A DNA stretch of 64,000 nucleotides from IMGVR_UViG_3300044644_001125:186001-250000, one strand, 5' to 3'. Positions 5,839 to 58,578 are shown, numbered from the stretch's first letter. Program-made: numbers and translations. The notes: a model not told the origin generated them from the sequence alone.

Positions 5839-6831
5839 ATGGCAATCAGAATATTAACTGAAAAATCGACATACACTGTCGATTATCCTACTGCAATTGA
5901 GTTTGCAGAACAACAAGCCGAAGTCTTTTGGCTACCAGGTGAAATCGAGGTCGAAAAAGACCTGCATGATATGAAAACAACCTTCACCGAATCAGAATAT
6001 CATGGAGTTATCTCAACTCTAAAATTGTTTACAATATATGAGCTATCAGTTGGTAATGATTACTGGCAGAACTATGTTTCTAAAGTATTCCCGAGACCAG
6101 ACATCCAAAGAATGGCTGCTACCTTTTCATTTATGGAATTAGGGGTTCATGCACCATTCTACAACAAAATTAACGAAGTACTTGGTTTAGATACCGATGA
6201 GTTTTACAGTGATTATATGAACGACGAAGTTCTTAAAAATCGCATGGCTTGGATTGGTAAACGTACCGAAAAACGTGATACAGTTTATGATATCTTAAAG
6301 TCAGTTGGTATCTTCTCTATGATTGAAGGTGCTATTCTATACAGTTCATTTGCTTTCTTAAAGCATTTCAATAGTGTAGGTAAAAATAAGCTCAGTGCCA
6401 TAAACTCCGGAATCAACTTCTCGGCTATCGATGAAACTTTGCACAGTCAAGCAGGTGCTTGGTTATTCAGAACATTGTTATCAGAGGCTATCGCTGACAA
6501 TGCGTTAACTGAAGAAGAATTAAAAAGTCTAAAAGATGATTTAGTCGAAACAGCCAACTTGATTCTTGAGCATGAAACTGTTATTATTAATAAGATATTC
6601 GAAAAAGGTCCAATCCGTGGTATTACGGATAAGCAGTTGATTCATTTTGTTGAATCAAGATTGGATACTTGTTTGAAAAACTTGGGTTACAAAGCTATCT
6701 TTAAACCCACGTACAACCCTATCGAAGAATGGTTCATGAAAGATTTGAATTCGAGTGTTCTACACGATTTCTTTTCAAGTACTGGATCGGATTATACACG
6801 CGCTTGGATTGAAGGACGTTTCACATGGTAA
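5839..6831 (+). CDS. nrdB: ribonucleotide reductase class I beta subunit
   Basis: FWLPGE, ELGVHAPFY, IEG..LYSSF, DETLH. Confidence 0.93.
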   Translation: MAIRILTEKSTYTVDYPTAIEFAEQQAEVFWLPGEIEVEKDLHDMKTTFTESEYHGVISTLKLFTIYELSVGNDYWQNYVSKVFPRPDIQRMAATFSFMELGVHAPFYNKINEVLGLDTDEFYSDYMNDEVLKNRMAWIGKRTEKRDTVYDILKSVGIFSMIEGAILYSSFAFLKHFNSVGKNKLSAINSGINFSAIDETLHSQAGAWLFRTLLSEAIADNALTEEELKSLKDDLVETANLILEHETVIINKIFEKGPIRGITDKQLIHFVESRLDTCLKNLGYKAIFKPTYNPIEEWFMKDLNSSVLHDFFSSTGSDYTRAWIEGRFTW

Positions 6832-9401
6832 AAAAAGAACAATCAATTTATGCTGAATTAGGCGAGGAACGTAAACGCCTACAAGAAGAAGGTAAACTGC
6901 CTGAATGGGTAACCACACCAGCATGGCAAATGCTAAAAGAAAATTACCTATCTGAGAAGTACCCTGATTTATACTCGGTTTATCATCGAGTAGCCGATCA
7001 TGCTGCAAAGTATACAAATAATCAAGAAGAATGGAGTGCCAAGTTCTTTGAATTGCTTTGGAATGGTTGGTTAGCTGCTTCAACTCCAGTTCTATCTAAT
7101 ATGGGTACTGGTATTGGTTGTGCAGTGTCTTGTTCTGGTGGTTATATCAATGATAGCGTATATGACTTTTATGATGCACAAAAAGAAGCCGCAGTTCTGT
7201 CTAAAAATGGATTTGGTACTTCTGGTTACTTAGGTGCTATCAGACCACGCGGTTCTAAAATTGCAGGTATGAAAGGTGCTGCATCTGGTGTATTGCCAGT
7301 ATTCAAAGACTTTGTACAGCTATCACGTGATATCAGCCAAGGTAGCCAACGAAGAGGTGCTTGGGCTGGTTATATCGAAATCGATCATGGTGATTTCCAT
7401 GAATTAGTTAATTACATTGGTAAAAACCCAGACGATGCTAATATTGGTTGGAATGTAACTGATGCGTTTATTGCTAGATTAGATGCTGGTGATCCTGATG
7501 CAATTGAACGCTATCAAAAAGCACTTAAATTGAAAATGATTACAGGTAAAGGTTACTTTTTCTTTGTTGATAAAGTAAACCGCCAAGCACCTCAGATGTT
7601 TAAAGACAAAGGATTGGAGATTAAAGCATCTAATCTCTGCTTAACTGGTGATACATTAATCAAAATCAAGATTGCTGATGCTATTAACAGTATTAAGTTA
7701 GAAGACTTTGTTCAATACTACACCGCCGATTCTACAGTGCAAGTACAAACTTACTTAGATGGTAATGTCCATTGGTCATCAGTTAGTGCTGCTGCTCAAA
7801 CTGCGATTGTTACTGAGTTGTATGAAATTTCAACAAAAGATAGTATGATTAAATGTACTAGTAATCACAAAATCTTTACGGTTAACCGTGGTTATGTAGA
7901 AGCTAAGGACTTAACGGAAACCGATTATCTTTTAGCGAGTAACGGTGAAGTTGCTAGTATTACAGTTAATATTATTGAAGTTGAAGAAACTCCAGTATAT
8001 GACATCACGGTACCAGAAACAGAATGCTTCTTTGCCAATGATCTTTTAGTACACAACTGCTCAGAAATTGCATTATTTTCAGACGAAGACCATACATTCT
8101 CATGTGTATTATCTTCAATGAATGCGTCACTTTACGATGAGTGGAAAGATACTGACGCAGTGTTTAATGCAACTGTTTTCTTAGACTGTGTTAACCAAGA
8201 TTTAATTGAAATTGGTAAAACAAAACGTGGTATGGAAAAAGTTGTTCGATTTGCTGAGAAAAGCCGTGCATTAGGTTTAGGTATGCTTGGTTTCCATACT
8301 TATCTACAAGATAACATGATCGCATTTGATTCAATGGAAGCCTATTACAAGAATACTGAAATCTTTAAGCATTTACATGATGAATCTAAAAGAGCATCTG
8401 AGTGGATGGCTTCAGCATTTGGAGAACCTGAATGGTGTGAAGGTTACGGTGTTAGAAACGTAACGAGAATCGCGATTGCGCCGAATATGTGTGTAACAGC
8501 GGATACTAAGATTGTTCTAGGTGACCAATCAGTTGTTGATTATGCTACCTTGATTGGTAAAATGGGTCTTGATTATGATGCTATACGAGCAACAAATGAT
8601 AAACAATGGCATTCTGCCGTTACTCCAGTAGTAGTTGCAACTCCTGAAGGTACTAAAACTGTTGATAAAATCTGGTATAACGGTATTGAAACTGTTTATA
8701 TGGTAACTTTCACGAAAGGCGATGAATACTATTCAATTACCTGTACGGAAAAACATAAGTTTAGACGTATCGATGGTGAATGGATTGAAGCACATGATTT
8801 AGTTAAAGGTGAGCAGTTTGACAATGGTTGGACTTTTGAAGTTATTGAAGAAATGCCGCTACAAGAAGCGACTTTTGACATCGAAGTTCCAGACGAGCAC
8901 TGTTATCTTTTAGAATCAGGTATTGTTAGTCATAACTCGTCTTCATTAATTTGTGGTTCTGTATCACAAGGTATTGAGCCAATCTACAAAAACGCATACG
9001 TGCAAAACACGGCTGCTGGTAAGATTGATCGAGTTAACCCAACTTTATTACGATTAATGAAAGAAAAAGGTGTTTATTCTGATAAGATCGTTAAAGATAT
9101 TATTGATAATCACGGTTCAGTACAACACGTTGACTGGCTAACAGATGATGAAAAAGCTGTATTTAAAACAGCATTTGAAATTCCACAAACCCAGATCATT
9201 CGATTGGCTTCTGCTAGACAACGGTTTATTGACCAAGCACAAAGTATTAACTTATTCTTTAGTGCTGAAGAAGATGAAGAATACATTAGTGAAGTTCATA
9301 AAATGGCATTCAAAGATCCGTATGTTAAATCACTGTATTACATTAGATCTGAGAATGGTGTTGATGTAAACAAATCAGCATGCGTTGCATGTGAAGGCTA
9401 A
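6825..9401 (+). CDS. nrdA: ribonucleotide reductase class I alpha subunit with two inteins
   Basis: STPVLSN, VSCSG, SNL/CSEI, IAPN/SSS, QAQSINL, KSLYY, C-terminal CVAC. Confidence 0.95.
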   Translation: MVKKEQSIYAELGEERKRLQEEGKLPEWVTTPAWQMLKENYLSEKYPDLYSVYHRVADHAAKYTNNQEEWSAKFFELLWNGWLAASTPVLSNMGTGIGCAVSCSGGYINDSVYDFYDAQKEAAVLSKNGFGTSGYLGAIRPRGSKIAGMKGAASGVLPVFKDFVQLSRDISQGSQRRGAWAGYIEIDHGDFHELVNYIGKNPDDANIGWNVTDAFIARLDAGDPDAIERYQKALKLKMITGKGYFFFVDKVNRQAPQMFKDKGLEIKASNLCLTGDTLIKIKIADAINSIKLEDFVQYYTADSTVQVQTYLDGNVHWSSVSAAAQTAIVTELYEISTKDSMIKCTSNHKIFTVNRGYVEAKDLTETDYLLASNGEVASITVNIIEVEETPVYDITVPETECFFANDLLVHNCSEIALFSDEDHTFSCVLSSMNASLYDEWKDTDAVFNATVFLDCVNQDLIEIGKTKRGMEKVVRFAEKSRALGLGMLGFHTYLQDNMIAFDSMEAYYKNTEIFKHLHDESKRASEWMASAFGEPEWCEGYGVRNVTRIAIAPNMCVTADTKIVLGDQSVVDYATLIGKMGLDYDAIRATNDKQWHSAVTPVVVATPEGTKTVDKIWYNGIETVYMVTFTKGDEYYSITCTEKHKFRRIDGEWIEAHDLVKGEQFDNGWTFEVIEEMPLQEATFDIEVPDEHCYLLESGIVSHNSSSLICGSVSQGIEPIYKNAYVQNTAAGKIDRVNPTLLRLMKEKGVYSDKIVKDIIDNHGSVQHVDWLTDDEKAVFKTAFEIPQTQIIRLASARQRFIDQAQSINLFFSAEEDEEYISEVHKMAFKDPYVKSLYYIRSENGVDVNKSACVACEG
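7638..8057 (+). mobile_element. mini-intein 1 in NrdA (140 aa)
   Basis: SNL|CLTGDT...CTSNHKIF...VYDITV..TECFFANDLLVHN|CSEI; no endonuclease domain. Confidence 0.92.
8490..8936 (+). mobile_element. mini-intein 2 in NrdA (149 aa)
   Basis: IAPNM|CVTADT...CTEKHKF...TFDIEV..EHCYLLESGIVSHN|SSS. Confidence 0.92.
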
Positions 9402-9451
9402 ATCACAAGGGTGGTAGCAATACCACCCTTTACTTTTTGAGGAGAAACCCT

Positions 9452-9667
9452 ATGACACCTGAAAACTTCTGCTACTGGCTGCAAGGTAAAGCTGAATTGC
9501 ATCCAAATCCACCGACCAAAGAACAGTGGCAAGCCATTCGAGAACATTTGGATTTAGTAATGACCAAAGTTACGCCACCTGTACAATACGATAACGTCTT
9601 TCCTAGTTTCTTTGAAGACGACTATATCGATTTTAACAAGATCGATCCACTTACATTAACCTGTTAG
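9452..9667 (+). CDS. conserved phage hypothetical (MTPENFCYWLQG)
   Basis: GAGGAG SD before ATG 9452. Confidence 0.65.
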   Translation: MTPENFCYWLQGKAELHPNPPTKEQWQAIREHLDLVMTKVTPPVQYDNVFPSFFEDDYIDFNKIDPLTLTC

Positions 9668-42236: not shown

Positions 42237-43793
42237 TTAATCATCTTCACCATAATATCGCAATACTTCTGCAACGACCTTTGATCTTTCAATATCAGAA
42301 TGATTAAAATGAACAATCGAGATTGCTGAATCTGCTTCCTTTGCACTTTCATACAATTCCATGAAATTCCTCAATCCATTACGATCACCCCTATCACTCT
42401 GCGCTAAATCACCCGTAATTATCAATTTACTCGACGAAGCTATTCGAGTAAGAAGCATTTTCATTTGATTGGGTGTGGTTAACTGCGCCTCATCTGCAAT
42501 AATAACTGAATTCTGTAAGTTTCGCCCTCTAAGGCACCCTATTAATGCAAATTCAATAACTTTTTCATTGACATAATGATTTACCGTATCTGGACTCCAA
42601 TTATCTTCAAGTATATCAACGATGCTCAATACATACGGTTCGATTTTATCACGTACTCCGCCCGGTAAGGCACCAATAATTTCATCAGTAGCGTATAGCG
42701 GTCTAGCAATCACCAGTTTATCATATTTTCCCTTTTTTAACTGATCAATTCCATACTGCACTGCTAATAAAGTGTTGTGATTCACAATAAACTCATCAGT
42801 AACATACAGATGATCCTCACTATCAATCAAGATACACTGACATTCTTCCATCTCAGCTTCTACAACTGAGAGCACTGGCATTAACTCTAAAGGACTCTCA
42901 ACGATACTAAACCGAATATGAACACCAGTGTCTTTGATACAAGCAGAACCACCGATAGAACGAACTAAGTAGACAACCGAGTCTTGTAACAAGGCACCAG
43001 CAGTAAAGACTAGGTTACCAGAATCGACAGCATGGATGCTGGTATCGAGTAGACCTTGTAGTAATTTAACTTTTTGTGAACGAGAAGCGTTGAGATATTC
43101 CGCTGGGATAGCTTTATCGTCTTTTAAAAGCATAGTACCTAATTGGAAAGGGTCGATTGGTAGTTCTACATCGTCCATGATTTCGTGTTTAGGTAGGCGA
43201 ATATAAGGCATAATAGAGCCATGATAACGCAGTTTAAGTAGTTCTAGCGTATTGATGACTGCAGGTTTATTATCAATGAATACTTCCCATAGGTGTTCTG
43301 CGCAGGCTAGAGTAGAACGACCATCGTGCAAGGTGATTGAATACGTTTGTTTACTACCTTGTGGGAATAAGCCGACGACATTAGCGGTATTACCATCAGG
43401 AGTAGTGACTTTATCACCTACTGCGATATCACCCATAGTAGTCCACCCGCCAGGGATTTTGATTTTGGAGGTTAGCGGTTGAGCTTTACCAGTACCAGCT
43501 GGACCGATAGCAAAAACAATTTGTTTTTTAGGATTGTTAAGTTCCATTAAGTATTGTTCTTGGCTAAGGTTTTTGGGGTGAATTTGAACCCGTTTACGTT
43601 TAGCAGCCAACCGTTGATCGATTGACATTTGTTGTGGGTCTGGTTGTTGCTGGTGGTTTTGTTGATGGGACTGCTGGTGATTTCTACTGGAGTTTTTACT
43701 ACGGGCTTTTTTGCTTTGGGGTGGGGTGTTTGGTTCATGCGTTTCGTTGAAATACTCGCGTGAATCCGTGTGTCTTGATCTTTTTCTCGTCAT
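42237..43793 (-). CDS. phoH: PhoH-family ATPase with intein
   Basis: GPAGTGK|...|TLLA, IARP, GALPG, RGR, IIADEAQ, RI, ITGD..QSD, DIERS. Confidence 0.92.
   Translation of the reverse strand: MTRKRSRHTDSREYFNETHEPNTPPQSKKARSKNSSRNHQQSHQQNHQQQPDPQQMSIDQRLAAKRKRVQIHPKNLSQEQYLMELNNPKKQIVFAIGPAGTGKAQPLTSKIKIPGGWTTMGDIAVGDKVTTPDGNTANVVGLFPQGSKQTYSITLHDGRSTLACAEHLWEVFIDNKPAVINTLELLKLRYHGSIMPYIRLPKHEIMDDVELPIDPFQLGTMLLKDDKAIPAEYLNASRSQKVKLLQGLLDTSIHAVDSGNLVFTAGALLQDSVVYLVRSIGGSACIKDTGVHIRFSIVESPLELMPVLSVVEAEMEECQCILIDSEDHLYVTDEFIVNHNTLLAVQYGIDQLKKGKYDKLVIARPLYATDEIIGALPGGVRDKIEPYVLSIVDILEDNWSPDTVNHYVNEKVIEFALIGCLRGRNLQNSVIIADEAQLTTPNQMKMLLTRIASSSKLIITGDLAQSDRGDRNGLRNFMELYESAKEADSAISIVHFNHSDIERSKVVAEVLRYYGEDD
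42774..43484 (-). mobile_element. intein in PhoH Walker A (237 aa, Ala1, class-3-like)
   Basis: GK|AQPLTSKIKIPGGW...ACAEHLW...CQCILID...VNHN|T; decayed LAGLIDADG-like LLQGLLDTS. Confidence 0.9.
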
Positions 43794-43965: not shown

Positions 43966-43993
43966 TTGACATCAGTTATCTTTTAGTTATAAT
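43966..43993 (+). promoter_or_regulatory. sigma70-type early promoter, Lcl cluster 2
   Basis: TTGACA-TCAGTTATCTTTTAGT-TATAAT; near-identical copy at 50432. Confidence 0.85.
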
Positions 43994-49563: not shown

Positions 49564-50361
49564 ATGGATTACTACAAGATTTTAGGTTTATCGCGTGGCG
49601 CATCGGCTGATGAAATAAAGAAAGCCTATCGCTCACTGGCAATGAAACATCACCCAGACCGAGGTGGTTCTGAAGAACAATTTAAAGACATTGCAACGGC
49701 TTATGAAGTCTTAAGTGACCCAGTTAAAAAACAACGGGTTGATAATGGACAAGATCCAAATGGACCTGAACCGCAATTCAATGGTGGATTTAATCCATTT
49801 GAATTTTTCCATGGCGGTGGTCCTCATGGGTTTCATCACGTACAACGTAATACCAGTCTTTCTATCCATGTAGAAGTTTCACTTGAAGAAGTACTAACTG
49901 GTAAATCATTTGATGCTGACTTGGCTTACCCATCTGGTCAGAAGAAAACGATTAAACTTGAAGTTCCTGCTGGTGTGTTACATGGTCAGCAGATTCGATA
50001 TCAAGGTCTGGGTGATGATTCGATTGCTGGTATTCCTCCTGGTGATTTGATTGTTAATATTAACATTAGACCTCATCGAATGTTTAGACGTGAAGGTGAT
50101 GCGCTAGTAGTTGAAAAAACCATATCAGTTTGGGATGCTCTTTTAGGTACTAAACTTGAAATTCATACCCTAGATGACAGAACGCTAAACCTGACAATCC
50201 CAGCTGGTATCCAACCAGAAACTGTTTTAAGTTGTAATGGTGAGGGATTGCCTAATATGCAAACTAAACGTCGTGGTAATCTTTTGATTAAAGTTAAAAT
50301 CAAGATACCCAAAGACTTAACACCAGATCAAATACTGCACATACAAGCAGTTGCTACTTAA
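49564..50361 (+). CDS. dnaJ: DnaJ-class molecular chaperone without zinc finger
   Basis: DYY.ILG, HHPDRGG, F..I..AYEVLSD; DnaJ_C GDL.V.I...H..F.R.G. Confidence 0.92.
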   Translation: MDYYKILGLSRGASADEIKKAYRSLAMKHHPDRGGSEEQFKDIATAYEVLSDPVKKQRVDNGQDPNGPEPQFNGGFNPFEFFHGGGPHGFHHVQRNTSLSIHVEVSLEEVLTGKSFDADLAYPSGQKKTIKLEVPAGVLHGQQIRYQGLGDDSIAGIPPGDLIVNINIRPHRMFRREGDALVVEKTISVWDALLGTKLEIHTLDDRTLNLTIPAGIQPETVLSCNGEGLPNMQTKRRGNLLIKVKIKIPKDLTPDQILHIQAVAT

Positions 50362-50431
50362 ATTCAATACCCAGCTATAGTCTGGGTATTCTTTTATTAG
50401 GCTCGCACCTAACGGTGCTCGCAAATAATGG

Positions 50432-50459
50432 TTGACATCGGTTATCTTTTAGTTATAAT
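50432..50459 (+). promoter_or_regulatory. sigma70-type early promoter, Lcl cluster 3
   Basis: TTGACA-TCGGTTATCTTTTAGT-TATAAT. Confidence 0.85.
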
Positions 50460-50484
50460 ACGCAAAACTTAACCGGAGGCAATC

Positions 50485-50685
50485 ATGAGAAAATCCCTAT
50501 CACATAAAGAAATCTTAATGCTAAAACTCGATAATCTTTTAGCGACTGCTGAATCACTCGAGGACAAACTCGTAACCGAGAATAATCAATGGCAATATCG
50601 TGCAACCGTCCTACGTAGCGATATTCAAAATTTGATTGACTATGTAGAATGGTCGGTTGAAGAGGCTGAACATCATGAACTTTGA
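50485..50685 (+). CDS. small coiled-coil hypothetical protein
   Basis: GGAGG SD. Confidence 0.6.
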   Translation: MRKSLSHKEILMLKLDNLLATAESLEDKLVTENNQWQYRATVLRSDIQNLIDYVEWSVEEAEHHEL

Positions 50686-50968
50686 AATAGCACCTAAATC
50701 AACTGAGATACAAGCCAATTGGGATAATGCCAAGTTGTATTGCTTTTCTCTCAATATCAATGGAAAAACTGGATGGAGATTACCTACCAAAGACGAACTA
50801 GATGAAATATACCAATCCGAAAATGATTTTAGGAATACATTTTACTGGTCATCTACTGTGGGTAATGGCAACGGCGCCTTGGCTCAGAGTTTCCGCACTG
50901 GCAAACAGTATGACGCCAGTAAGGACAGCGGCGGCGGCCACGTTAGAGCCATTAGGGATTTAACATGA
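50675..50968 (+). CDS. DUF1566/Lcl paralog 14 with DGR-type VR
   Basis: NNC/NNT-patterned 3' end. Confidence 0.88.
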   Translation: MNFEIAPKSTEIQANWDNAKLYCFSLNINGKTGWRLPTKDELDEIYQSENDFRNTFYWSSTVGNGNGALAQSFRTGKQYDASKDSGGGHVRAIRDLT

Positions 50969-51261
50969 AATACGAAATAGCACCTAAATCAACTGAAACA
51001 AGATTAACATGGGAAGAAGCTAGAATGTATTGCTTTTCTCTTAATATCGATGGTAAGATCGGATGGAGATTACCCACTAAAGAAGAACTCAACGAGATTT
51101 ATGAATCAGTAAACGATTTCGAGAAGGCTTGGTACTGGTCCTCTACTGAGAACAATGGCAACACCGCCTGGAGTCAGGGTTTCAACGGTGGCTACCGGAG
51201 CAACGGCGGCAATAAGGTCAACGGCCTTAACTACGTTAGAGCCATCAGATCAATCCCTTAA
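50965..51261 (+). CDS. DUF1566/Lcl paralog 15 with DGR-type VR
   Basis: gag aac aat ggc aac acc gcc tgg agt cag ggt ttc aac ggt ggc...aat aag gtc aac...tac gtt aga gcc. Confidence 0.9.
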   Translation: MKYEIAPKSTETRLTWEEARMYCFSLNIDGKIGWRLPTKEELNEIYESVNDFEKAWYWSSTENNGNTAWSQGFNGGYRSNGGNKVNGLNYVRAIRSIP

Positions 51262-51349
51262 CCTTTAGTATTTTTTGCGAGGCATAAAGCCTAAAAGATG
51301 ATTAATAATAATGCGAGCACCGTTAGGTGCGATTCAATAGGAAAACCAA

Positions 51350-51640
51350 ATGAACTTTGAAATAGCACCTAAATCAACTGAGATAAAAGCAAATTGGGAT
51401 GATGCCAGATTATATTGCTTTGCTCTTAATATAGATGGTAAGACTGGATGGAGATTACCAAATAAAGAAGAATTGAATGAAATCTATGAATCCGAAAATG
51501 ATTTTAGGAATACATTTTACTGGTCATCTACCGAGAACGATGACAGCAACGCATGGATGCAGTCCTTCAACAGTGGTGGTCAGACCTTCAACCTCAAGAG
51601 CATCGACATACTCTACGTTAGAGCAGTGAGAGATATATGA
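51350..51640 (+). CDS. DUF1566/Lcl paralog 16 with DGR-type VR
   Basis: NNC/NNT-patterned 3' end. Confidence 0.9.
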   Translation: MNFEIAPKSTEIKANWDDARLYCFALNIDGKTGWRLPNKEELNEIYESENDFRNTFYWSSTENDDSNAWMQSFNSGGQTFNLKSIDILYVRAVRDI

Positions 51641-51930
51641 ACTTTGAAATAGCACCTAAATCAACTGAGATCCAAGCCAATTGGTATGATGCCAGATTAT
51701 ATTGCTTTGCTCTTAATATAGATGGTAAGACTGGATGGAGATTACCTACCTTAGAAGAATTAAATGAAATTTATGAATCAGAAAATGATTTTGAAAAATG
51801 GGGATATTGGTCTTCTACTGAGAGCAGTGGCGACTACGCCTGGAAGCAGAATTTCAACGGTGGCAACCAGTACACCGGTAATAAGAACTACGGCGGCTAC
51901 TACGTTAGAGCCATCAGATCAATCCCTTAA
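51637..51930 (+). CDS. DUF1566/Lcl paralog 17 with DGR-type VR
   Basis: cag aat ttc aac ggt ggc aac cag tac acc ggt aat aag aac tac. Confidence 0.9.
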   Translation: MNFEIAPKSTEIQANWYDARLYCFALNIDGKTGWRLPTLEELNEIYESENDFEKWGYWSSTESSGDYAWKQNFNGGNQYTGNKNYGGYYVRAIRSIP

Positions 51931-52019
51931 CCTTTGGTATTTTTTTGCGAGGCATAAAGCCTAAAAGATGATTAATAATAATGCGAGCACCGCTAGGTGC
52001 GATCCAATAGGAAAACCAA

Positions 52020-52313
52020 ATGAACTTTGAAATAGCACCTAAATCAACTGAAATTAGACTAAACTGGTTTGATGCCAAGTTGTATTGCTTTGCTCTTAAC
52101 ATAGATGGTAAGACTGGATGGAGATTGCCAGATGAAGAAGAACTCAACGAGATTTATGAATCAGAAAACGATTTCGTTGGTAACTACTACTGGTCCTCTA
52201 CTGAGATCAATAGCTACCTTGTCTGGAGTCAGAGTTTCAGTAATGGCGATCAGGGCAACAGCTCTAAGTACTACGGCTCTGTCTATGTTAGAGCCATCAG
52301 ATCAATCCCTTAA
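52020..52313 (+). CDS. DUF1566/Lcl paralog 18 with DGR-type VR
   Basis: NNC/NNT-patterned 3' end. Confidence 0.9.
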   Translation: MNFEIAPKSTEIRLNWFDAKLYCFALNIDGKTGWRLPDEEELNEIYESENDFVGNYYWSSTEINSYLVWSQSFSNGDQGNSSKYYGSVYVRAIRSIP

Positions 52314-52400
52314 CCTTTTGGCTTTTTGCGAGGCATAAAGCCTAAAAGATGATTAATAACATTGCGAGCACCGCTAGGTGCGAGCCAATAGGAAAACCAA

Positions 52401-52712
52401 ATGAAATTTGAAATAGCACCCAAATCAACAGAGATTCGAGCCAATTGGTATGATGCCAGATTATATTGCTTTGCTCTTAACATAGATGGTAAGACTGGAT
52501 GGAGATTACCAAATAAAGAAGAATTGGATGAAATATACCAATCCGAAAATGATTCCGAAAATGATTTCGAAATTGGTTGGGATTGGTATTGGTCCTCAAC
52601 TGAGTACAATGATGACTTAGTCGTCTGGATTCAGTATTTCTATAATGGGCTTCAGAATAACGGTAAAAAGAACAGCCGCAGCGGATACGTTAGAGCCATC
52701 CGAGATATCTAA
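52401..52712 (+). CDS. DUF1566/Lcl paralog 19 with DGR-type VR
   Basis: Patterned 3' end; duplicated SENDSEND upstream. Confidence 0.88.
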   Translation: MKFEIAPKSTEIRANWYDARLYCFALNIDGKTGWRLPNKEELDEIYQSENDSENDFEIGWDWYWSSTEYNDDLVVWIQYFYNGLQNNGKKNSRSGYVRAIRDI

Positions 52713-52734
52713 ATTTTAATTAAATGGTAGACAA

Positions 52735-53415
52735 ATGAATATTAATCAAGAAATTGCAAGAGTAAAATATCGCCTTAGTAAATTAGAACAACAGCGAGAT
52801 GAATTCCGGAGTATGTTTTTACCAAACAATCGTGATAACAAGGTTGATTGTAATTATAACAAAAACCGTGTTGATAAATGGAGACTGCCTAATGTCTCTA
52901 ACTACGAAGTTAAAGAATGGTTAATTAACCTTGCATACGGTGTGCGTTCAAAATTCGTGACCGCTGATGAATTAATGCATAAATTGCACTCATTGCCTAC
53001 CGAGGTGCATGAGCGTATAATGTGGCACGCAAGTACTGATGGTGGGCAATGTTTCGAAGATCTGTTTAGTGGTGATAGTTCACCTGTTACTGAATCCGCT
53101 GCAAGTGAATCGAATTTTGAAATAGCCCCAAAATCAACCGAAGTTAAAACTAATTGGTACTATGCCAAACTGTATTGTATTGCTCTTAATATCGATGGAA
53201 AGACTGGTTGGCGTATGCCATCTAAAGAAGAACTAAATCAGATATACGAATCTGAAAATGATTTTGAGAAGGATTGGTATTGGTCATCCACTGAGGCTAT
53301 TGGTGAACAAGGTCATGGTGATTATGCTTGGTATCAGCATTTTGGTCCATATCCGGTACCGGACTTCTACAAGAAGTCTTACAAAAGATACATTAGAGCT
53401 ATCAGATCAATATAG
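52735..53415 (+). CDS. DUF1566/Lcl paralog 20 fused to a ~125-aa unrelated N-terminal domain
   Basis: Lcl domain starts at NFEIAPKSTE. Confidence 0.82.
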   Translation: MNINQEIARVKYRLSKLEQQRDEFRSMFLPNNRDNKVDCNYNKNRVDKWRLPNVSNYEVKEWLINLAYGVRSKFVTADELMHKLHSLPTEVHERIMWHASTDGGQCFEDLFSGDSSPVTESAASESNFEIAPKSTEVKTNWYYAKLYCIALNIDGKTGWRMPSKEELNQIYESENDFEKDWYWSSTEAIGEQGHGDYAWYQHFGPYPVPDFYKKSYKRYIRAIRSI

Positions 53416-53443
53416 TTCTCGCGAACCAAACAGGAGACAAAAA

Positions 53444-53740
53444 ATGAACTTTGAAATAGCACCTAAATCGACTGAGATACAAACCAACTGGGAAGAAGCT
53501 AGAATGTATTGCTTTTCTCTTAATATCGATGGTAAGATCGGATGGAGATTGCCAACTAAAGAAGAACTAAACGACATTTATGAATCAGAAAATGATTTTG
53601 AAGAATGGTACTACTGGTCCTCTACTGAGTCCAATGGCTCAAAAGCATGGTTTCAGAATTTCAACGTTGGCCACCAGAGCAGTCACGGCGTTAAGAACAA
53701 CGGCAACATCTACGGTAGAGCCATTAGAGATTTACTATGA
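53444..53740 (+). CDS. DUF1566/Lcl paralog 21 with DGR-type VR
   Basis: AGGAG SD, ATG 53444; patterned 3' end. Confidence 0.9.
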   Translation: MNFEIAPKSTEIQTNWEEARMYCFSLNIDGKIGWRLPTKEELNDIYESENDFEEWYYWSSTESNGSKAWFQNFNVGHQSSHGVKNNGNIYGRAIRDLL

Positions 53741-54042
53741 ACTTTGAAATAGCACCTAAATCAACTGAGATCCAATCCAATTGGGATGATGCCAAGTTGT
53801 ATTGTTTTTCCCTTAATATCGATGGTAAGACTGGATGGAGATTACCTACCAAACAAGAACTGAATGAGATATACCAATCAGAAAATGATTTTGAAAACAA
53901 TTGGTATTGGTCCTCGACCGAGTACTCCTCGACTGAGTACGATGGCATCTTCGTCTGGTATCAGAATATGTCAAACGGAGTTCAGTACAACCGTACTAAG
54001 AACGGCAGCTACTACGTTAGAGCCATTAGATCAATCACTTAA
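53737..54042 (+). CDS. DUF1566/Lcl paralog 22 with DGR-type VR
   Basis: 15-nt tandem duplication (SSTEY x2) at the VR start. Confidence 0.9.
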   Translation: MNFEIAPKSTEIQSNWDDAKLYCFSLNIDGKTGWRLPTKQELNEIYQSENDFENNWYWSSTEYSSTEYDGIFVWYQNMSNGVQYNRTKNGSYYVRAIRSIT

Positions 54043-54056
54043 CCTTTTGGATTATC

Positions 54057-54350
54057 ATGAACTTTGAAATAGCACCAAAATCAACTGAGATAAAAGCAAA
54101 TTGGGATGATGCCAGATTATATTGCTTTGCTCTTAACATAGATGGTAAGACAGGGTGGCGTATGCCATCTAAAGAAGAACTCAACGAGATTTATGAATCA
54201 GTAAACGATTTCGAGAAGGCTTGGTACTGGTCCTCTACTGAGAATAATGGCAACTACGCCTGGGATCAGTTTATGTCGAATGGCTACCAGGCCAGCGGCA
54301 ATAAGAACTACGGCACCTTCTACGTTAGAGCAGTTAGATCAATCCCTTAA
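54057..54350 (+). CDS. DUF1566/Lcl paralog 23 with DGR-type VR
   Basis: Patterned 3' end followed by a hairpin at 54365. Confidence 0.9.
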   Translation: MNFEIAPKSTEIKANWDDARLYCFALNIDGKTGWRMPSKEELNEIYESVNDFEKAWYWSSTENNGNYAWDQFMSNGYQASGNKNYGTFYVRAVRSIP

Positions 54351-54529: not shown

Positions 54530-56107
54530 ATGATTGAACCGAGTAAAAACTTACAATCAATCTTTGAGGCAGCAACTGAGATTGCAAAAGAACACAGTCA
54601 TGAGTATATTACTCTTGAACATATTGCGTATGCAATCATGAGTGATCAAGATTCATATAACTTAATCGAAGGTTTTGGAGCAGATGCTAAGTTTATTAAA
54701 ATGAACTTAGATCACTATTTGAAAACCAATTTGGCTGAAATCGTAATCGATGATCCTAATCACGTACCACGTAAAACCAATTCGGTTGACCGTGTATTAC
54801 ATCGTTGCTTTACTCAAGTTGTATTCAGTGGTCGTAATACAACTGAAGTTACTGATGTTATCATTAGTATCTTAAGTGAAAAGAACAGTTTTGCTTACTA
54901 CTTCTTTAATCGTGGTGGTGTTTCTAAAGAAAAGTTTGCTAAACACTTTAATGCCAATCGTGAAGATGGTGACTTGGGTGATCAAGCAGTTGGTAGTGCG
55001 AAAAACCCAGATAAGTTATTGGATGCGTATTGCACTAACTTGAGTGCACTTGCTCGTGATAATAAAATCGATCCAGTTATCGGTCGTGAAACCGAGTTAG
55101 AAGAAATCCAATTGATTCTTGCTCGTAGACATAAGTGTAATGTACTTTTAACCGGTTCGCCAGGCACTGGTAAGACTCAAATTTTTTCTGGCCTAGCCCG
55201 TAAAATTCACGAGAAAGATGTACCTAAGTTTATTCAAGACCACGAAGTTTATTCGCTAGATATTAGTTCATTATTGGCTGGTACTAAGTATCGTGGTGAT
55301 TTTGAAGAACGCATCAAAGGTGTTCTTGCGGCATTAGAGAAAAAAGGTAAAGTAATCTTATTCATTGATGAAGCTCATATGATGCAAGGTGCTGGTGCTT
55401 CAAGTAATAGTGCAAATGACTTATCTAACATGCTGAAACCTTTATTAACTAAAGGTACAATTAAGATTGTTGCTTCTACTACATGGGAAGATTATCGTAA
55501 ACATTTTGAGAATGACCGTGCATTAATGCGTCGATTCCAAAGAGTTGCATTCGATGAACCATCACCAGAAATGGCAGTTAAAATCTTAAAAGGTATTCGT
55601 AAGTATTATGAAGCACATCATAATGTGAAAATTACCAATGCTGCGATTGAACAAGCTGTTAAGTTATCGGTTAAGTACATCAATGACAAGCATCTACCAG
55701 ATAAAGCAATTGACATTATCGATTGTGCATCTGCTCGTTATAAATTGAATGATGATCCAACAACTGAGGGTGTAACTCAAATTGTTGATGTTGAGCAGAT
55801 TTCATTTGAGATTTCTAAGATGCTTGGTATGCCACTCGAAGCAATGACACAGCGTGAAAGTGCTAATATGATGGAACTTGAATCTGTGATGAAAGCCTCG
55901 ATCTTTAATCAAGATAAGGCTATCGATCAATTAGTTGATAAAATCTTCTTATCGCAGGCTGGAATGAAAGCACCTAACAAACCAATTGGTTCATTTTTAC
56001 TAACTGGATCCAGCGGAACTGGAAAATGTCTGGAAAAACAACAACTTATAACAGTGCGGATGAATCCAGACATGCACCGTTTTGCTAAAGCACGTAACCT
56101 AATTTAG
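54530..56107 (+). CDS. clpA: ClpA-like ATPase N-half (499 aa) plus 26-aa split-intein N-fragment
   Basis: Clp_N, DPVIGRE, GSPGTGKT, LFIDEAH, AL.RRF, LPDKAID, GSSGTGK|CLEKQQL...NLI*. Confidence 0.92.
   Translation: MIEPSKNLQSIFEAATEIAKEHSHEYITLEHIAYAIMSDQDSYNLIEGFGADAKFIKMNLDHYLKTNLAEIVIDDPNHVPRKTNSVDRVLHRCFTQVVFSGRNTTEVTDVIISILSEKNSFAYYFFNRGGVSKEKFAKHFNANREDGDLGDQAVGSAKNPDKLLDAYCTNLSALARDNKIDPVIGRETELEEIQLILARRHKCNVLLTGSPGTGKTQIFSGLARKIHEKDVPKFIQDHEVYSLDISSLLAGTKYRGDFEERIKGVLAALEKKGKVILFIDEAHMMQGAGASSNSANDLSNMLKPLLTKGTIKIVASTTWEDYRKHFENDRALMRRFQRVAFDEPSPEMAVKILKGIRKYYEAHHNVKITNAAIEQAVKLSVKYINDKHLPDKAIDIIDCASARYKLNDDPTTEGVTQIVDVEQISFEISKMLGMPLEAMTQRESANMMELESVMKASIFNQDKAIDQLVDKIFLSQAGMKAPNKPIGSFLLTGSSGTGKCLEKQQLITVRMNPDMHRFAKARNLI
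56027..56104 (+). mobile_element. split intein N-fragment (26 aa)
   Basis: Cys directly after the Walker A Lys, then stop at 56105-56107. Confidence 0.8.
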
Positions 56108-57236
56108 CAAAATCTTCAAGAATTACTCGTCTGGTTTCTTGAACACTAGACGAGTACATTTCATATACATACCAACCTTGCATTTCCGCGATTTCTTTTT
56201 TGTACATATCGAATTGATATTTCGCGTCTGCTGTTCTACCATCAAATACCTGACTCCAATTATCCCATTTTTCTTGGTCCCAAATGGGATTTGGGTGGAA
56301 ACATTCACCGTGGTATTCGATGATAATTGCTAATGATGGGATGGTTAAATCGTAGTAGAACCAACGCATTTCGTCTTCGTCAAATATAGCCCATTCTTGG
56401 TTTCCTTCAACCCCAATATAGTATGTTATCTCATACTTATCCAATAGATTTATTATATCCGAAAGAGCAACCAATGATTCGGCACTTGCAGATGATGAAT
56501 TTGTATTTTTACGCTTCCGATTGGCTCGCATATCATTGTATAATCTGGTTCCTTCCTCTATACCATGCTTTGCTATATAAGATTCCAGCGTTGGACTTCG
56601 TTTTTTATTGATTCCCGGTATAGATTCCATGTGGGTTGACCAGTTCTCGTTTCTTTCTTTAAACTTGATAGCACCGAGTTCCTCGCCGTATTTTTTCTGA
56701 TATGTTTCCAATGTATTGGTTGCTTGAACCTGACGCACCAATTCCTTTGCTTCTGCTTCGGTGTATCCTTTCTTAGTCCAATATTTTACATTACGTTGAG
56801 ACACATCATCTCGGCCTCTAGTTTTATCTGCTGATATCAGAGATTTTCTACGCTGAGTTTCACTGGAATGATCGAAGTGTGCAGTTTTCCTAGAGTTAGC
56901 ATCCAAATAAATTATAGTACCATGCATTACGCCATACATTGTTACGTGATAATTTAAGGAACCTATCTTGTACGTTTTTAAATCCAGCCATCTAGCAGCC
57001 CAACCAGATAATCCATACTTAATGAATTTAACAAATGTTTCTCGTCTATCGTTAGTGTATAAACCTTGTTTATCGATTTCTGAAATCTCTTCCAGTTCTG
57101 CTTCGGTTAATGGTCTATCACCAAATGCTTCCTTGTAAAATGGACTGTCCGTTATTCTTGCATGAATTGGTTTAATCAAATCTGGGTTGTATCGTCTTTT
57201 AGTTCTGGCGACAGGTGTTTCAATCGTAGTTTCCAT
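56085..57236 (-). CDS. Vsr-like/PD-(D/E)XK free-standing homing endonuclease
   Basis: Repeated Y..K.G.EEG modules; C-terminal FYYDL.I....IIEYHGECFH...D..K...A...G. Confidence 0.75.
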   Translation of the reverse strand: METTIETPVARTKRRYNPDLIKPIHARITDSPFYKEAFGDRPLTEAELEEISEIDKQGLYTNDRRETFVKFIKYGLSGWAARWLDLKTYKIGSLNYHVTMYGVMHGTIIYLDANSRKTAHFDHSSETQRRKSLISADKTRGRDDVSQRNVKYWTKKGYTEAEAKELVRQVQATNTLETYQKKYGEELGAIKFKERNENWSTHMESIPGINKKRSPTLESYIAKHGIEEGTRLYNDMRANRKRKNTNSSSASAESLVALSDIINLLDKYEITYYIGVEGNQEWAIFDEDEMRWFYYDLTIPSLAIIIEYHGECFHPNPIWDQEKWDNWSQVFDGRTADAKYQFDMYKKEIAEMQGWYVYEMYSSSVQETRRVILEDFAKLGYVL

Positions 57237-57272
57237 AGTTTTATCCTCTTTTGGTTAATTTGTAATATCGTG

Positions 57273-57300
57273 TTGACAAGTAAGATACATATGTTATAAT
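57273..57300 (+). promoter_or_regulatory. sigma70 promoter (extended -10) for the clpA C-half
   Basis: TTGACA-16-TATAAT with TGn. Confidence 0.75.
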
Positions 57301-57339
57301 GAGTCTTCATTCTATTTATTAACCATCAGGAGAGCTACA

Positions 57340-58578
57340 TTGATTACAGAAACACTACCAATTGGAAAAATGTTTGAGATATTGGAACAATATGAGAAAT
57401 TACGCTTCTCCCCAGATCGGGAACAGTTCCTTAATACTCCATTACAAATCCAAAACGAAAACGGCGAATGGATTGACATATCGGCCGCCATTACTAAAGA
57501 AGATACCGGTAGAGAAGTAAGATTCGATAACGGTGATTCGTTAAAAGCTGCTGATAGACATCGCATTTTTAACGGTGAAACCTGCATTTTCTTTGATTCA
57601 CTTAACGTAGGTGATTCTTTGAAAAAAGCTAACGGTGAAACCATCACAGTAACAGAAATTAACACAATCCCAGATACCCTATACTACGACCTTACAGTCG
57701 AGAGTGATACACATTTATACCAAACTGCTAATGGGATCGTCCATCATAACACGGAAACTTGTAGAAAACTAGCAGAAAAGATGCACATGCCATTAGTTCG
57801 TTTTGACATGAGTGAATACCAAGAGAAACACTCAGTGGCAAGATTGATTGGTTCACCTCCTGGTTATGTTGGATTTGAAGACAACGCAGGTCAGTTAATT
57901 ACTAAACTGCAAGAAAATCCACACTGTGTTCTGCTACTAGATGAAATCGAAAAAGCACATCCTGATGTAACAAATATCATGTTACAATTCATGGATAATG
58001 GATTTGTAACTGGTTCTAACGGTAAACAAGCAGATGGTCGTAACTGTATTCTTATTATGACGAGTAACTTGGGTGCTCGTGACAGTGAACGTAATACTAT
58101 CGGTTTTGGTGATTTAGCTAGAACTGGTGAAGATGATAAAGCAATTAACGAATACTTTGCACCTGAATTCCGCAATCGTTTAGATGCTATCATCAAGTTT
58201 GCTCCACTAGAACACAGCACAGTTCTTAAAATCGTGGATAAATTCATTGGTGAGTTAAACGCCCAGTTGAAAGACAAAGATATCTTAATTGAAATCGATG
58301 AAACTACTGCTGAATGGTTAGCTAAACTTGGTTACGATAAGAAAATGGGTGCTAGACCTCTTTCAAGAGTAATCGATACTAAACTGAAAAGTCCATTAAG
58401 TCGTCGTGTTTTATTTGGTGATTTGGTTAACGGTGGTCATGTTAAAGTTACTATTGAAAATGACGAACCCGTTTTCACAGTTTCTGAGTATGTTAAACCA
58501 GTAGTGGAATCAGATCAAAAACTGATCGTTGAAGATGGGCAATTGGTATTAGCTGATGATCACGCAGACGACAACTAA
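57340..58578 (+). CDS. clpA: split-intein C-fragment (137 aa) plus ClpA C-half (275 aa)
   Basis: AGGAG + TTG start; KAADRH (block B), YYDLTV..TH.Y.TANGIVHHN|TETCR; DMSEYQEKHSVARLIGSPPGYVG, LLLDEIEKAHP, PEFRNRLD, GARPL. Confidence 0.92.
   Translation: MITETLPIGKMFEILEQYEKLRFSPDREQFLNTPLQIQNENGEWIDISAAITKEDTGREVRFDNGDSLKAADRHRIFNGETCIFFDSLNVGDSLKKANGETITVTEINTIPDTLYYDLTVESDTHLYQTANGIVHHNTETCRKLAEKMHMPLVRFDMSEYQEKHSVARLIGSPPGYVGFEDNAGQLITKLQENPHCVLLLDEIEKAHPDVTNIMLQFMDNGFVTGSNGKQADGRNCILIMTSNLGARDSERNTIGFGDLARTGEDDKAINEYFAPEFRNRLDAIIKFAPLEHSTVLKIVDKFIGELNAQLKDKDILIEIDETTAEWLAKLGYDKKMGARPLSRVIDTKLKSPLSRRVLFGDLVNGGHVKVTIENDEPVFTVSEYVKPVVESDQKLIVEDGQLVLADDHADDN

What the first reader, a model, noticed from the sequence alone, without database searches (positions are those of the whole stretch)
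54530..58578. clpA fractured by an atypically split intein (26-aa IntN, 137-aa IntC)
Seen: the N-half ends GSSGTGK|CLEKQQLITVRMNPDMHRFAKARNLI-stop. The C-half, 1.2 kb downstream, has its own TTGACA/TATAAT promoter, AGGAG and TTG start, then intein blocks B, F and G (…GIVHHN|TETCR). Trans-splicing would restore Walker A GTGK-TE of NBD2 and give a 774-aa ClpA (499+275). Established: fractured phage genes with split inteins are known, and atypical split inteins with very short N-fragments are rare and valued for protein labelling. Inference: a probably uncharacterised split intein, with ClpA assembly dependent on two separately transcribed halves.
Basis: partly seen in the sequence, partly recalled or inferred. 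Interest (0 to 1): 0.8.

Follow-up and report, generated by a model that had tools for sequence, protein, structure and literature searches.

The report
Split intein fracturing phage clpA
A giant freshwater phage carries its ClpA unfoldase gene in two pieces, broken at the ATP-binding loop by a self-splicing protein element (intein) that is split very near its start and holds a homing-endonuclease gene; it is a new, apparently working member of the rare "atypically split" inteins used for protein labelling.

Summary
clpA is broken at the NBD2 Walker A motif (GTGK|TE). The N-half ends in a 26-aa IntN. The C-half starts with a 137-aa IntC behind a perfect sigma-70 promoter, AGGAG and TTG.

- **Intein identity:** IntC folds as a HINT domain (pLDDT 94.8; intein Z up to 15.6). 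All catalytic residues are kept. The closest solved relative is VidaL, a characterised atypically split intein.
- **Exteins:** an intein-less ortholog is exactly 774 aa and aligns without gaps.
- **Not an artefact:** the arrangement recurs with zero differences in contigs from four independent studies.
- **Under selection:** against a relative about 83% identical in DNA, dN/dS is 0.06 for IntN and IntC and 0.09 for the endonuclease.
- **Mobile:** identity to an intein-less strain jumps from about 89% to 100% exactly at the insertion site.
- **Family:** at least 155 clusters, all in P-loop NTPases. Of the best 150, 122 start with IntC.

Splicing itself is untested. Verdict: a real, probably functional new member of a known kind; moderate interest.

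The parts
54530..56026 (+). N-extein coding region: ClpA N-domain, NBD1 and the start of NBD2 up to the Walker A Lys499 (GSSGTGK)
   Evidence: ORF listing and Pfam hits Clp_N, AAA and AAA_lid_9. phrog_4871 profile positions 10-510. TIGR02639 ClpA. 91% identical to residues 1-499 of the intein-less 774-aa ortholog P0153.
56027..56107 (+). IntN, 26 aa, plus the TAG stop. A 12-aa strand core beginning with Cys1 is followed by a 14-aa tail.
   Evidence: Sequence. Six fractured clpA loci all have a 26-27-aa IntN with the same two-part layout. dN/dS is 0.056 against L003, on few sites. The core resembles the VidaL IntN printed in the PMC10264447 supplement.
56085..57236 (-). Free-standing putative homing endonuclease gene, 383 aa, with a C-terminal Vsr/DUF559-like nuclease domain. 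It overlaps the end of the N-half by 23 nt.
   Evidence: ORF. Homologs lie between the clpA halves in all six loci, at 27-71% identity and on either strand. D296, E307, G310, H314, D343 and K346 are invariant. Atlas neighbours carry DUF559, Vsr, DUF2726 or NUMOD3. One of six members hits DUF559 at E 1.7e-3. dN/dS is 0.09.
56079..56156 (.). Two hairpins between the convergent N-half and endonuclease genes: an 11-bp stem across the N-half stop codon and a 12-bp stem
   Evidence: RNA fold of 56060-56200: -34 kcal/mol, z = -5.4 against shuffles. Their function, possibly termination, is inferred.
57273..57300 (+). Sigma-70 consensus promoter for the C-half: TTGACA, 16 nt with an extended TG, TATAAT
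   Evidence: 12/12 match. One of five perfect matches in the window, all on the + strand, against 0.07 expected. Conserved in L003.
57328..57332 (+). Shine-Dalgarno AGGAG, 7 nt before the TTG start
   Evidence: Sequence. Conserved in L003.
57340..57750 (+). IntC, 137 aa, TTG start. It contains block B (His74), block F, and block G (His136-Asn137).
   Evidence: phmmer finds 155 relatives. K53, H74 and N137 are invariant. The family profile hits VidaL 6vgv at E 7.4e-10. AF2 pLDDT is 94.8. The top 50 Foldseek PDB hits are all HINT-fold domains, nearly all inteins. VIA-align Z is 11-15.6, with model residue 1 matching residues 11-14 of canonical inteins. TIGR01443 intein_Cterm scores above its cut-off. 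dN/dS is 0.062.
57751..58578 (+). C-extein, 275 aa, plus stop. It starts at Thr+1 of Walker A (TETCRK) and carries the rest of NBD2 and the D2-small domain.
   Evidence: Pfam AAA_2 and ClpB_D2-small. phrog_4871 positions 510-758. 94.5% identical to residues 500-773 of P0153. dN/dS is 0.024.

Best explanation
The 1,724-bp stretch 56027-57750 is a composite mobile element inserted between the Lys and Thr codons of the NBD2 Walker A motif of a jumbo-phage clpA. It consists of an intein split close to its N-terminus, at the S1-type site used by VidaL, with a free-standing Vsr/DUF559-like homing endonuclease gene lodged in the split on the opposite strand.

Shown by sequence and computation:
- The gene is in two ORFs.
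- The exteins abut exactly.
- IntC is a near-complete HINT domain lacking only the first 11-14 residues.
- The 12-residue core of IntN supplies that missing strand.
- Cys1, His74, His136, Asn137 and Thr+1 are conserved.
- Both halves, both intein parts and the endonuclease are under purifying selection.

Inferred mechanism:
1. The N-half is made from the upstream clpA promoter. The C-half is made from its own sigma-70 consensus promoter, AGGAG and TTG.
2. IntN docks into IntC to complete the fold.
3. Class-1 splicing follows: an N-S acyl shift at Cys1, transesterification to Thr+1, Asn137 cyclisation, then an O-N shift.
4. This restores GTGK-TE and yields a 774-aa ClpA. Until then NBD2 has no intact P-loop.
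5. The spliced ClpA presumably works with the phage's own ClpP.

The endonuclease is inferred to cut intein-free alleles, so that the whole element spreads by homing together with about 30 nt of flanking extein.
For: Anatomy.

Extein junction:
- phrog_4871 and TIGR02639 profiles meet at one position.
- Contiguous Phosso ClpA reads GVGK|TE at the same place.
- The intein-less ortholog P0153/L004 is 774 aa and 92.2% identical without gaps.

Intein nature:
- Family alignment with invariant K53, H74 and N137, and H135, H136, Y127 and F12 above 90%.
- Profile against PDB: VidaL at 7.4e-10, then gp41-1, RadA, PolB16, DnaE and Cat inteins.
- AF2 pLDDT 94.8. The Foldseek top 50 are all HINT-fold domains, nearly all inteins.
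- VIA-align Z up to 15.6, with IntC residue 1 matching residues 11-14 of canonical inteins and residue 20 of fused VidaL.
- TIGR01443 scores above its cut-off.

Not an artefact: contigs with zero differences span both junctions in four runs from four studies.

Function:
- dN/dS against L003 is 0.057 for the N-extein, 0.056 for IntN, 0.062 for IntC, 0.024 for the C-extein and 0.09 for the endonuclease.
- The same fractured layout occurs in five further clpA loci down to 58% IntC identity, and in a recA locus.
- Promoter, RBS and TTG are conserved in L003.

Mobility:
- Intein-free alleles exist (L004, L005, L016, and a 1,778-nt contig in run X2).
- Identity between the window and L016 is 88.7% upstream of the site and 100% from 30 nt downstream of it.
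- Against L004 the 30 codons around the site are only 57% identical, in a protein 92% identical overall.

The phage encodes ClpP.
Against: - No experiment, transcript or peptide shows that either half is made or that splicing happens.
- The IntN-IntC complex could not be modelled.
- On its own, the IntC sequence hits Pfam Intein_splicing only at E 1e-3, below the gathering score. The case rests on the family profile and the predicted fold.
- Thr+1 is a less common nucleophile partner for Cys1, about 12% of inteins (PMC11766414). None of the characterised atypical split inteins whose junction residues I found in the papers read here (AceL-TerL, GOS-TerL, PolB16) pairs Cys1 with Thr+1; VidaL's junction appears only in a GFP-fusion construct (...SHN followed by SGKG).
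- Charge complementarity between IntN and IntC is seen here (+3 against -12) but is not general in the family.
- The endonuclease has no significant Pfam, NCBIfam or PDB match of its own. Its assignment rests on position, conserved motifs and language-model neighbours.
Confidence: 0.82

Rival explanations
1. The two halves associate through the intein fragments but do not splice. ClpA then works as a non-covalent two-chain enzyme, or the fragments only cleave.
For: Splicing was not observed. Thr+1 and an Ala at the block B 'TxxH' Thr position might suggest weak chemistry.
Against: Cys1, His74, His136, Asn137 and a Thr or Ser at +1 are invariant or nearly so across 111 family members. That conservation is needed only for catalysis. 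VidaL has the same Ala-x-x-His block B and splices with a half-time of about 1 minute (PMC13014065). An unspliced product would leave about 160 extra residues in the middle of the Walker A loop.
Confidence: 0.08
2. clpA is a dead gene. A mobile endonuclease gene landed in an intein and destroyed it, and the halves are decaying pseudogenes.
For: The gene is interrupted by a stop and a reverse-strand ORF. Intein-free alleles exist in close relatives.
Against: dN/dS is 0.02-0.06 in both exteins and both intein parts, at dS 0.3-0.9. No frameshifts or stops occur in six diverged loci. Promoter, RBS and start are conserved.
Confidence: 0.04
3. The insert is removed at the RNA level, for example as a group I intron carrying the endonuclease gene, giving a contiguous intein ORF.
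For: Phage homing endonucleases often reside in group I introns. Dassa et al. found Vsr-like endonucleases in recA introns (PMC2677866).
Against: No Rfam family matches 55800-57600 at E up to 1. The endonuclease gene is on the opposite strand. The C-half has its own consensus promoter, RBS and start. In relatives the endonuclease ORF overlaps the C-half start codon, which fits translational coupling rather than an intron. In 122 of the best 150 family proteins IntC lies at the very N-terminus.
Confidence: 0.02
4. Assembly or chimera artefact: in the real genome the intein is contiguous or absent.
For: The genome is a metagenome assembly. An intein-free allele co-occurs in run X2 at higher depth.
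Against: Contigs with zero differences cover both junctions in runs X1-X4 from four studies. L003, about 83% identical in DNA, has the same layout.
Confidence: 0.01

Closest known systems
VidaL intein (PDB 6VGV/6VGW), a natural atypically split intein from Antarctic lake metagenome data
   Same: - Best PDB match of the family profile, E 7.4e-10.
- Structural match with Z 14.2 and TM 0.67.
- Same split position right after the first strand, with IntC starting at the first helix.
- Cys1, an Ala-x-x-His block B, and a hydroxyl residue following the terminal Asn (Ser in the published GFP-fusion construct...SHN then SGKG; Thr here). VidaL's native insertion site is not given in the papers I could read.
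- The IntN cores are alike: CLPKEAVVQIRL in VidaL against CLEKQQLITVRM here.
   Different: - Only about 20-22% identical in IntC.
- IntN here is 26 aa against VidaL's 16 aa, with an extra 14-aa tail that is conserved within this clade.
- IntC here is 137 aa and the residue at +1 is Thr.
- The host gene is clpA NBD2; VidaL's host gene is not stated in the papers I could read.
- Untested biochemically.
Fractured genes (Dassa et al. [quoted passage not shown]
   Same: - Both gene parts stay in the original order and orientation in one locus.
- A split intein sits at the break.
- A free-standing endonuclease gene lies in between, with a Vsr-like nuclease motif set.
- Gene control elements accompany the insert.
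- The context is a phage.
   Different: - Those inteins are split at the canonical site between motifs N4 and C2, with an IntN of about 100 aa. Here the break is about 12 residues into the fold.
- There the endonuclease is on the same strand and often overlaps the downstream part. Here, and in L002, L003 and L006, it is on the opposite strand and the C-half has its own promoter. L008, L009 and the recA locus have the same-strand form.
- ClpA is not among their eight host enzyme types.
AceL-TerL, GOS-TerL and Cat-TerL atypical split inteins (PDB 6DSL)
   Same: Natural short-IntN inteins of 25-37 aa in phage P-loop ATPase genes. CatC is the best single-sequence PDB hit, E 0.026, with Z 12.4.
   Different: They are split one element later, after the first helix (S2 site; PMC13014065), have Cys+1 and sit in a different host gene. 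This same phage genome appears to carry two TerL-type split inteins of its own.
Contiguous ClpA mini-intein P0003 (metagenomic phage contig)
   Same: Same insertion site (GSGK|C ... HHN|TE), 53% identical in IntC, same IntN core.
   Different: One ORF of 919 aa with no endonuclease gene, and a shorter linker without the conserved IntN tail motif. It probably represents the state before endonuclease invasion, or after its loss.

Membership tests
Class 1 intein (HINT domain) | Cys or Ser as the first intein residue, directly after the N-extein | tested here: met
   Cys500 follows Walker A Lys499. The same GK|C junction occurs in all six clpA loci and in contiguous relatives.
Class 1 intein (HINT domain) | Block B histidine, block F, and block G ending His-Asn followed by Cys, Ser or Thr at +1 | tested here: met
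   His74 and Asn137 are invariant, and His135 and His136 exceed 90% in 111 sequences. Thr138 is at +1. TIGR01443 intein_Cterm scores 19.6 bits against a cut-off of 15.6.
Class 1 intein (HINT domain) | HINT fold | tested here: met
   AF2 with the family alignment gives pLDDT 94.8. The top 50 Foldseek PDB matches are all HINT-fold domains, nearly all inteins. VIA-align Z is 11-15.6.
Class 1 intein (HINT domain) | Exteins are contiguous in intein-free homologs | tested here: met
   P0153/L004 is 774 aa (499+275), aligns without gaps and is 92.2% identical. Profile positions abut.
Class 1 intein (HINT domain) | Protein splicing activity | not testable with these tools
   Only indirect support: dN/dS of about 0.06 on both intein parts.
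Naturally split intein with an atypical N-proximal split (VidaL-type, S1) | The intein coding sequence is broken into two ORFs, with a stop after IntN and an independent start for IntC | tested here: met
   TAG at 56105-56107. Promoter, AGGAG and TTG at 57273-57342. Confirmed in independent contigs.
Naturally split intein with an atypical N-proximal split (VidaL-type, S1) | A short IntN (15-37 aa in known cases), with IntC holding blocks B, F and G | tested here: met
   IntN is 26 aa and IntC is 137 aa. The known range is taken from PMC13014065.
Naturally split intein with an atypical N-proximal split (VidaL-type, S1) | The break falls right after the first strand(s) and before the first helix | tested here: met
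   IntC residue 1 aligns to residues 11-14 of NpuDnaE, RadA and GyrA inteins and to residue 20 of fused VidaL. IntC residues 8-18 form the first helix.
Naturally split intein with an atypical N-proximal split (VidaL-type, S1) | Trans-splicing of separately made fragments | not testable with these tools
   No expression or biochemical data are available.
Fractured gene (Dassa et al. 2009) | [quoted passage not shown] | tested here: met
   Layout shown. The endonuclease identity is inferred.
Fractured gene (Dassa et al. 2009) | Intein broken at the canonical endonuclease-domain site, between motifs N4 and C2 | tested here: not met
   The break is about 12 residues into the fold. This is therefore a variant of the arrangement.
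Vsr-like homing endonuclease family (Dassa et al. 2009) | Significant sequence or profile similarity to Vsr/DUF559 nucleases | tested here: inconclusive
   There is no Pfam, NCBIfam or PDB hit for the window protein, and PF03852 and PF04480 do not reach it in the genome scan. One of six homologs hits DUF559 at E 1.7e-3. The ten nearest named Atlas clusters for residues 270-383 share a family or clan with the best of them; the families listed are DUF559, DUF2726 and, further down, Vsr.
Vsr-like homing endonuclease family (Dassa et al. 2009) | Conserved acidic and His catalytic residues, including the family-specific Glu before the G-x-x-x-H motif | tested here: inconclusive
   D296, E307, G310, H314 and D343 are invariant in six homologs. 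They fit the pattern described in PMC2677866. The residue-by-residue match to E. coli Vsr is my own inference and was not aligned with a tool.

The most novel reading that the evidence does not exclude
The clpA element may be one tip of a large and largely undescribed natural reservoir.

- The intein family is confined to the Walker A loops of phage P-loop NTPases: Clp, SF2 helicases, RecA/UvsX, DnaB, PhoH, TerL and clamp loader.
- About four fifths of its 150 best sequence clusters are naturally split at the VidaL-type site.
- In the clpA and recA members checked here, IntN is a 12-residue strand followed by a short tail that looks like an amphipathic helix and that VidaL lacks.
- The composite unit IntN-endonuclease-IntC moves as a whole between phage strains, carrying about 10 codons of C-extein with it.

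If so, the allelic series found here would make the birth of split inteins directly testable. The series comprises the empty site, the contiguous mini-intein, and the split forms with the endonuclease on either strand.
Probability: 0.3. Interest if true: 0.65.

Novelty: new member of a known kind. Interest (0 to 1): 0.5.

Why it matters
**For protein engineering.** Natural split inteins with an IntN short enough for peptide synthesis are sought after for protein semisynthesis and labelling. Only a handful have been characterised: AceL-TerL, GOS-TerL, VidaL and PolB16 (PMC13014065, PMC10189870). Natural ones usually behave better than artificially split ones. This one adds a new host site (the ClpA NBD2 P-loop) and a Cys1/Thr+1 pair. 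It also points to more than 100 related natural candidates.

**For biology.**
- It shows a phage unfoldase whose second ATPase ring cannot form until two separately encoded chains are spliced.
- It gives a clean population-level picture of an intein-endonuclease element in motion: occupied and empty alleles occur in the same lakes, and a recombination breakpoint sits exactly at the insertion site.

Tried and rejected
- **Megablast against phage records:** no match for the locus.
- **Single-sequence AF2 of IntC:** useless, pLDDT 37. It worked only with the family alignment.
- **Pfam on IntC alone:** only sub-threshold hits. PHROGs found nothing.
- **An apparent intein match in Sinorhizobium phage Phosso:** the alignment started at residue 122, but this was a spurious extension. 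That ClpA is contiguous and has no intein.
- **The search for related loci with the family alignment:** failed, because no stretch was conserved enough. The single-protein scan of viral contigs found only intein-free relatives.
- **The endonuclease:** no hit in Pfam, NCBIfam or PDB by profile. PF03852 and PF04480 scans of the genome did not reach it.
- **Electrostatic steering between IntN and IntC:** true here but not general across the six loci, so dropped as a family feature.
- **Group I/II intron explanation:** no Rfam match.
- **Burton et al. 2020 (PMC7275667), the VidaL paper:** not held. The VidaL sequence came from the PMC10264447 supplement and from PDB alignments.
- **Literature search for ClpA, ClpB, ClpX or ClpC intein:** only an unrelated ClpP intein mention.
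- **Modelling the IntN-IntC complex:** not attempted, because joined sequences are not accepted by the tools.

Full report
**Context.** The window is bases 186001-250000 of a single 327,256-bp contig. It is a virus record, estimated 92% complete, with 38% G+C. Sequencing runs that hold the locus are lake and freshwater metagenomes. It is therefore an uncultured freshwater jumbo phage.

**Observation.**
- ORF 54530-56107 encodes 525 aa with Clp_N, AAA and AAA_lid_9 domains. It runs to GSSGTGK499, then a 26-residue tail that starts with Cys, then TAG.
- ORF 57340-58578 encodes 412 aa. It starts at TTG, seven bases after AGGAG, and 40 bases after a perfect extended sigma-70 promoter at 57273-57300.
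- The promoter is not a chance match. TTGACA-N16-18-TATAAT occurs five times in the window, always on the + strand, against 0.07 expected.
- Residues 138-412 of the C-half carry AAA_2 and ClpB_D2-small.
It overlaps the end of the N-half by 23 nt.

**The exteins fit exactly.**
- On the phage ClpA profile phrog_4871, the N-half covers positions 10-510 and the C-extein covers 510-758. TIGR02639 behaves the same way.
- Contiguous ClpA of Sinorhizobium phage Phosso reads GVGK|TEVAK at the join.
- The best test is a natural one. Protein P0153 comes from a 271,688-bp scaffold with the same upstream array of Lcl_C genes (L004). It is exactly 774 aa and aligns to 499+275 without a gap at 92.2% identity.

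**The intervening protein parts are an intein.**
- Alone, IntC gives only sub-threshold Pfam hits: Intein_splicing at E 1e-3 and PT-HINT at 4e-3. Its one weak PDB hit is the Cat-TerL atypical intein.
- An exhaustive phmmer search found 155 related cluster representatives.
- In an alignment of 111 of them, K53, His74 (block B) and Asn137 are invariant. F12, Y127, H135 and H136 are above 90%.
- The profile matches solved inteins. VidaL (6VGV) is best at E 7.4e-10, followed by gp41-1, RadA, PolB16, DnaE and Cat.
- With this alignment AlphaFold gives pLDDT 94.8. The top 50 Foldseek PDB matches are all HINT-fold domains, nearly all inteins. VIA-align gives Z from 11 to 15.6.
- NCBI's intein C-terminal model passes its cut-off.

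**Where the split lies.**
- IntC residue 1 aligns to residues 11-14 of canonical inteins (NpuDnaE, RadA, GyrA) and to residue 20 of fused VidaL. IntC residues 8-18 form the first helix.
- The break is therefore right after the first strand. This is the S1 site used by VidaL and PolB16, not the S2 site of AceL/GOS-TerL (PMC13014065).
- The 12-residue IntN core supplies the missing strand. It resembles the VidaL IntN printed in the PMC10264447 supplement.
- The other 14 IntN residues have no canonical counterpart. They are not junk, however. Six fractured clpA loci all have a 26-27-aa IntN with the same core-plus-tail layout, and a fractured recA has it too.

**Not an artefact.** Contigs with zero differences cover the N-half/stop/endonuclease junction and the endonuclease/promoter/C-half junction in four runs from four studies. 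One of those runs may be the source sample.

**Evidence for function.**
- L003 carries the whole arrangement at about 83% DNA identity, including promoter, AGGAG and TTG.
- Nei-Gojobori dN/dS values between the window and L003 are:

| Part | dN/dS |
|---|---|
| N-extein | 0.057 |
| IntN (few sites) | 0.056 |
| IntC | 0.062 |
| C-extein | 0.024 |
| Endonuclease | 0.09 |

- More distant loci keep the layout down to 58% IntC identity: L002, L006, L008 and L009. A decaying gene would not look like this.
- The phage also encodes ClpP, a likely partner.

**The middle gene.**
- Homologs of the 383-aa ORF lie between the halves in all six clpA loci. They are on the minus strand in four loci and on the plus strand in two.
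- D296, E307, G310, H314, D343 and K346 are invariant.
- It has no Pfam, NCBIfam or PDB hit of its own. One homolog hits DUF559 at E 1.7e-3. The nearest named Atlas clusters carry DUF559, DUF2726 or Vsr.
- The motif pattern fits the Vsr-like homing endonucleases that Dassa et al. found in fractured genes (PMC2677866). I call it a putative homing endonuclease of that fold. The residue-level match to Vsr is my own inference.

**Evidence for mobility.** Intein-free alleles occur in close relatives.
- L016 is an IMG/VR contig. It is 88.7% identical to the window over 3.6 kb upstream of the site. It is 100% identical for the 920 nt that start 30 nt downstream of the site, and 98.98% identical over 5.3 kb there.
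- Against L004, the 30 codons spanning the site are 57% identical, inside a protein that is 92% identical overall.
- In run X2, a 1,778-nt contig at depth 13.8 skips the element. Element-bearing contigs in that run have depth 3-4.
- A recombination breakpoint therefore sits at the insertion site, and the element travels with its first 10 or so C-extein codons. This is what endonuclease-driven homing with co-conversion predicts. Precise loss is an alternative that I cannot exclude.
- P0003 is a contiguous ClpA mini-intein at the same site, 53% identical, with no endonuclease gene.

**The family.**
- Of the best 150 relatives, 122 start with IntC. The other 28 have it inside the protein, and in most of these the intein follows the Walker A Lys (GK|C).
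- All identifiable C-exteins are P-loop NTPases: Clp-type 22, SF2 helicase 19, RecA 11, DnaB 4, PhoH 3, TerL 3 and others.

**Rivals.**
- RNA-level removal is unlikely. No Rfam family matches the insert, the endonuclease gene is on the opposite strand, and the C-half has its own expression signals.
- Non-splicing association cannot be excluded without an experiment. It would not, however, explain the invariant catalytic residues.

**Comparison and verdict.** This is a new, untested member of the known class of natural atypically split inteins, and its closest solved relative is VidaL. It sits in a variant of the known fractured-gene arrangement. I found no paper naming a ClpA, ClpB or ClpX intein, although the searchable library is limited. 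Interest is moderate. It would not surprise an intein specialist, but it is useful both as a candidate tool and as a natural system for studying how split inteins arise.

Noticed in passing
window 6825-9398 (+): The ribonucleotide reductase large subunit (Ribonuc_red_lgN/lgC) carries two contiguous mini-inteins in one ORF. Their junctions are ASNL|CLTGDT...LLVHN|CSE and APNM|CVTADT...GIVSHN|SSS.
   Followed up: partly
window 42240-43793 (-): A PhoH-like ATPase has an intein in its Walker A loop that begins with Ala rather than Cys or Ser (GTGK|AQPLTS...IVNHN|TLL). It also has an insert between the splicing blocks. This may be a class 2 or class 3 intein.
   Followed up: partly
L013 (genome 31500-41500, outside the window): 1148-2767, 6661-7395, 8438-9541: The large terminase appears fractured into three ORFs by two further atypically split inteins of the AceL/GOS-TerL type.
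- The IntN fragments are about 38 and 29 aa.
- The IntC fragments are about 113 aa (ending HSHQ|C) and 115 aa (ending SSN|C).
- Piece 1 also holds a contiguous intein starting with Ala in its P-loop.
- A 307-aa ORF and a 342-aa DUF7487 ORF sit just upstream of pieces 2 and 3 and overlap their starts.
   Followed up: partly
genome 46507-48057, 67963-69819, 60825-62936, 319186-322353 (outside the window): There are more inteins in the same phage.
- A UvsX/RecA-like protein has a contiguous intein very like VidaL (ECYDFEV.HPNHRY).
- A DnaB-like helicase has one at GGSG|C...SHN|TGKS.
- An SF2 helicase has one at GAGK|C...THN|T.
- A 1,056-aa protein, possibly the portal (not checked against any family), has a large intein.
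In all, the profile found intein-like domains in about ten ORFs of 327 kb.
   Followed up: partly
window about 50300-54350 (+); L004:169-4833: A tandem array of about ten small paralogous Lcl_C (DUF1566) genes lies just upstream of clpA. It is much more diverged between strains than the region downstream of clpA. In relative L004 an IS605 OrfB/TnpB-like gene is inserted in the array.
   Followed up: no
window 11391, 38244, 43966, 50432, 57273 (+): Five perfect TTGACA-N16-TATAAT promoters are present, all on the + strand, against 0.07 expected. Those at 43966 and 50432 have almost identical spacers, which suggests a repeated promoter cassette.
   Followed up: no
window 56079-56156: Two strong hairpins lie where the N-half and the reverse-strand endonuclease gene converge. 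One spans the N-half stop codon. The fold scores z = -5.4 against shuffles. No T-run follows, so a terminator role is uncertain.
   Followed up: no
genome 154746-155282 (+) and 306374-306634 (+), outside the window: The phage encodes its own ClpP (PF00574, E 2e-59), a likely partner of the spliced ClpA. A stand-alone 123-aa ORF is homologous to the nuclease domain of the clpA endonuclease, E 3e-9.
   Followed up: no
L014:2298-4817 and L015 (metagenome contigs): A phage recA is fractured in the same way. Its 118-aa N-part ends in a 32-aa IntN. A same-strand 289-aa NUMOD3 endonuclease ORF overlaps both neighbours. The C-part starts with a 138-aa IntC of this family.
   Followed up: partly
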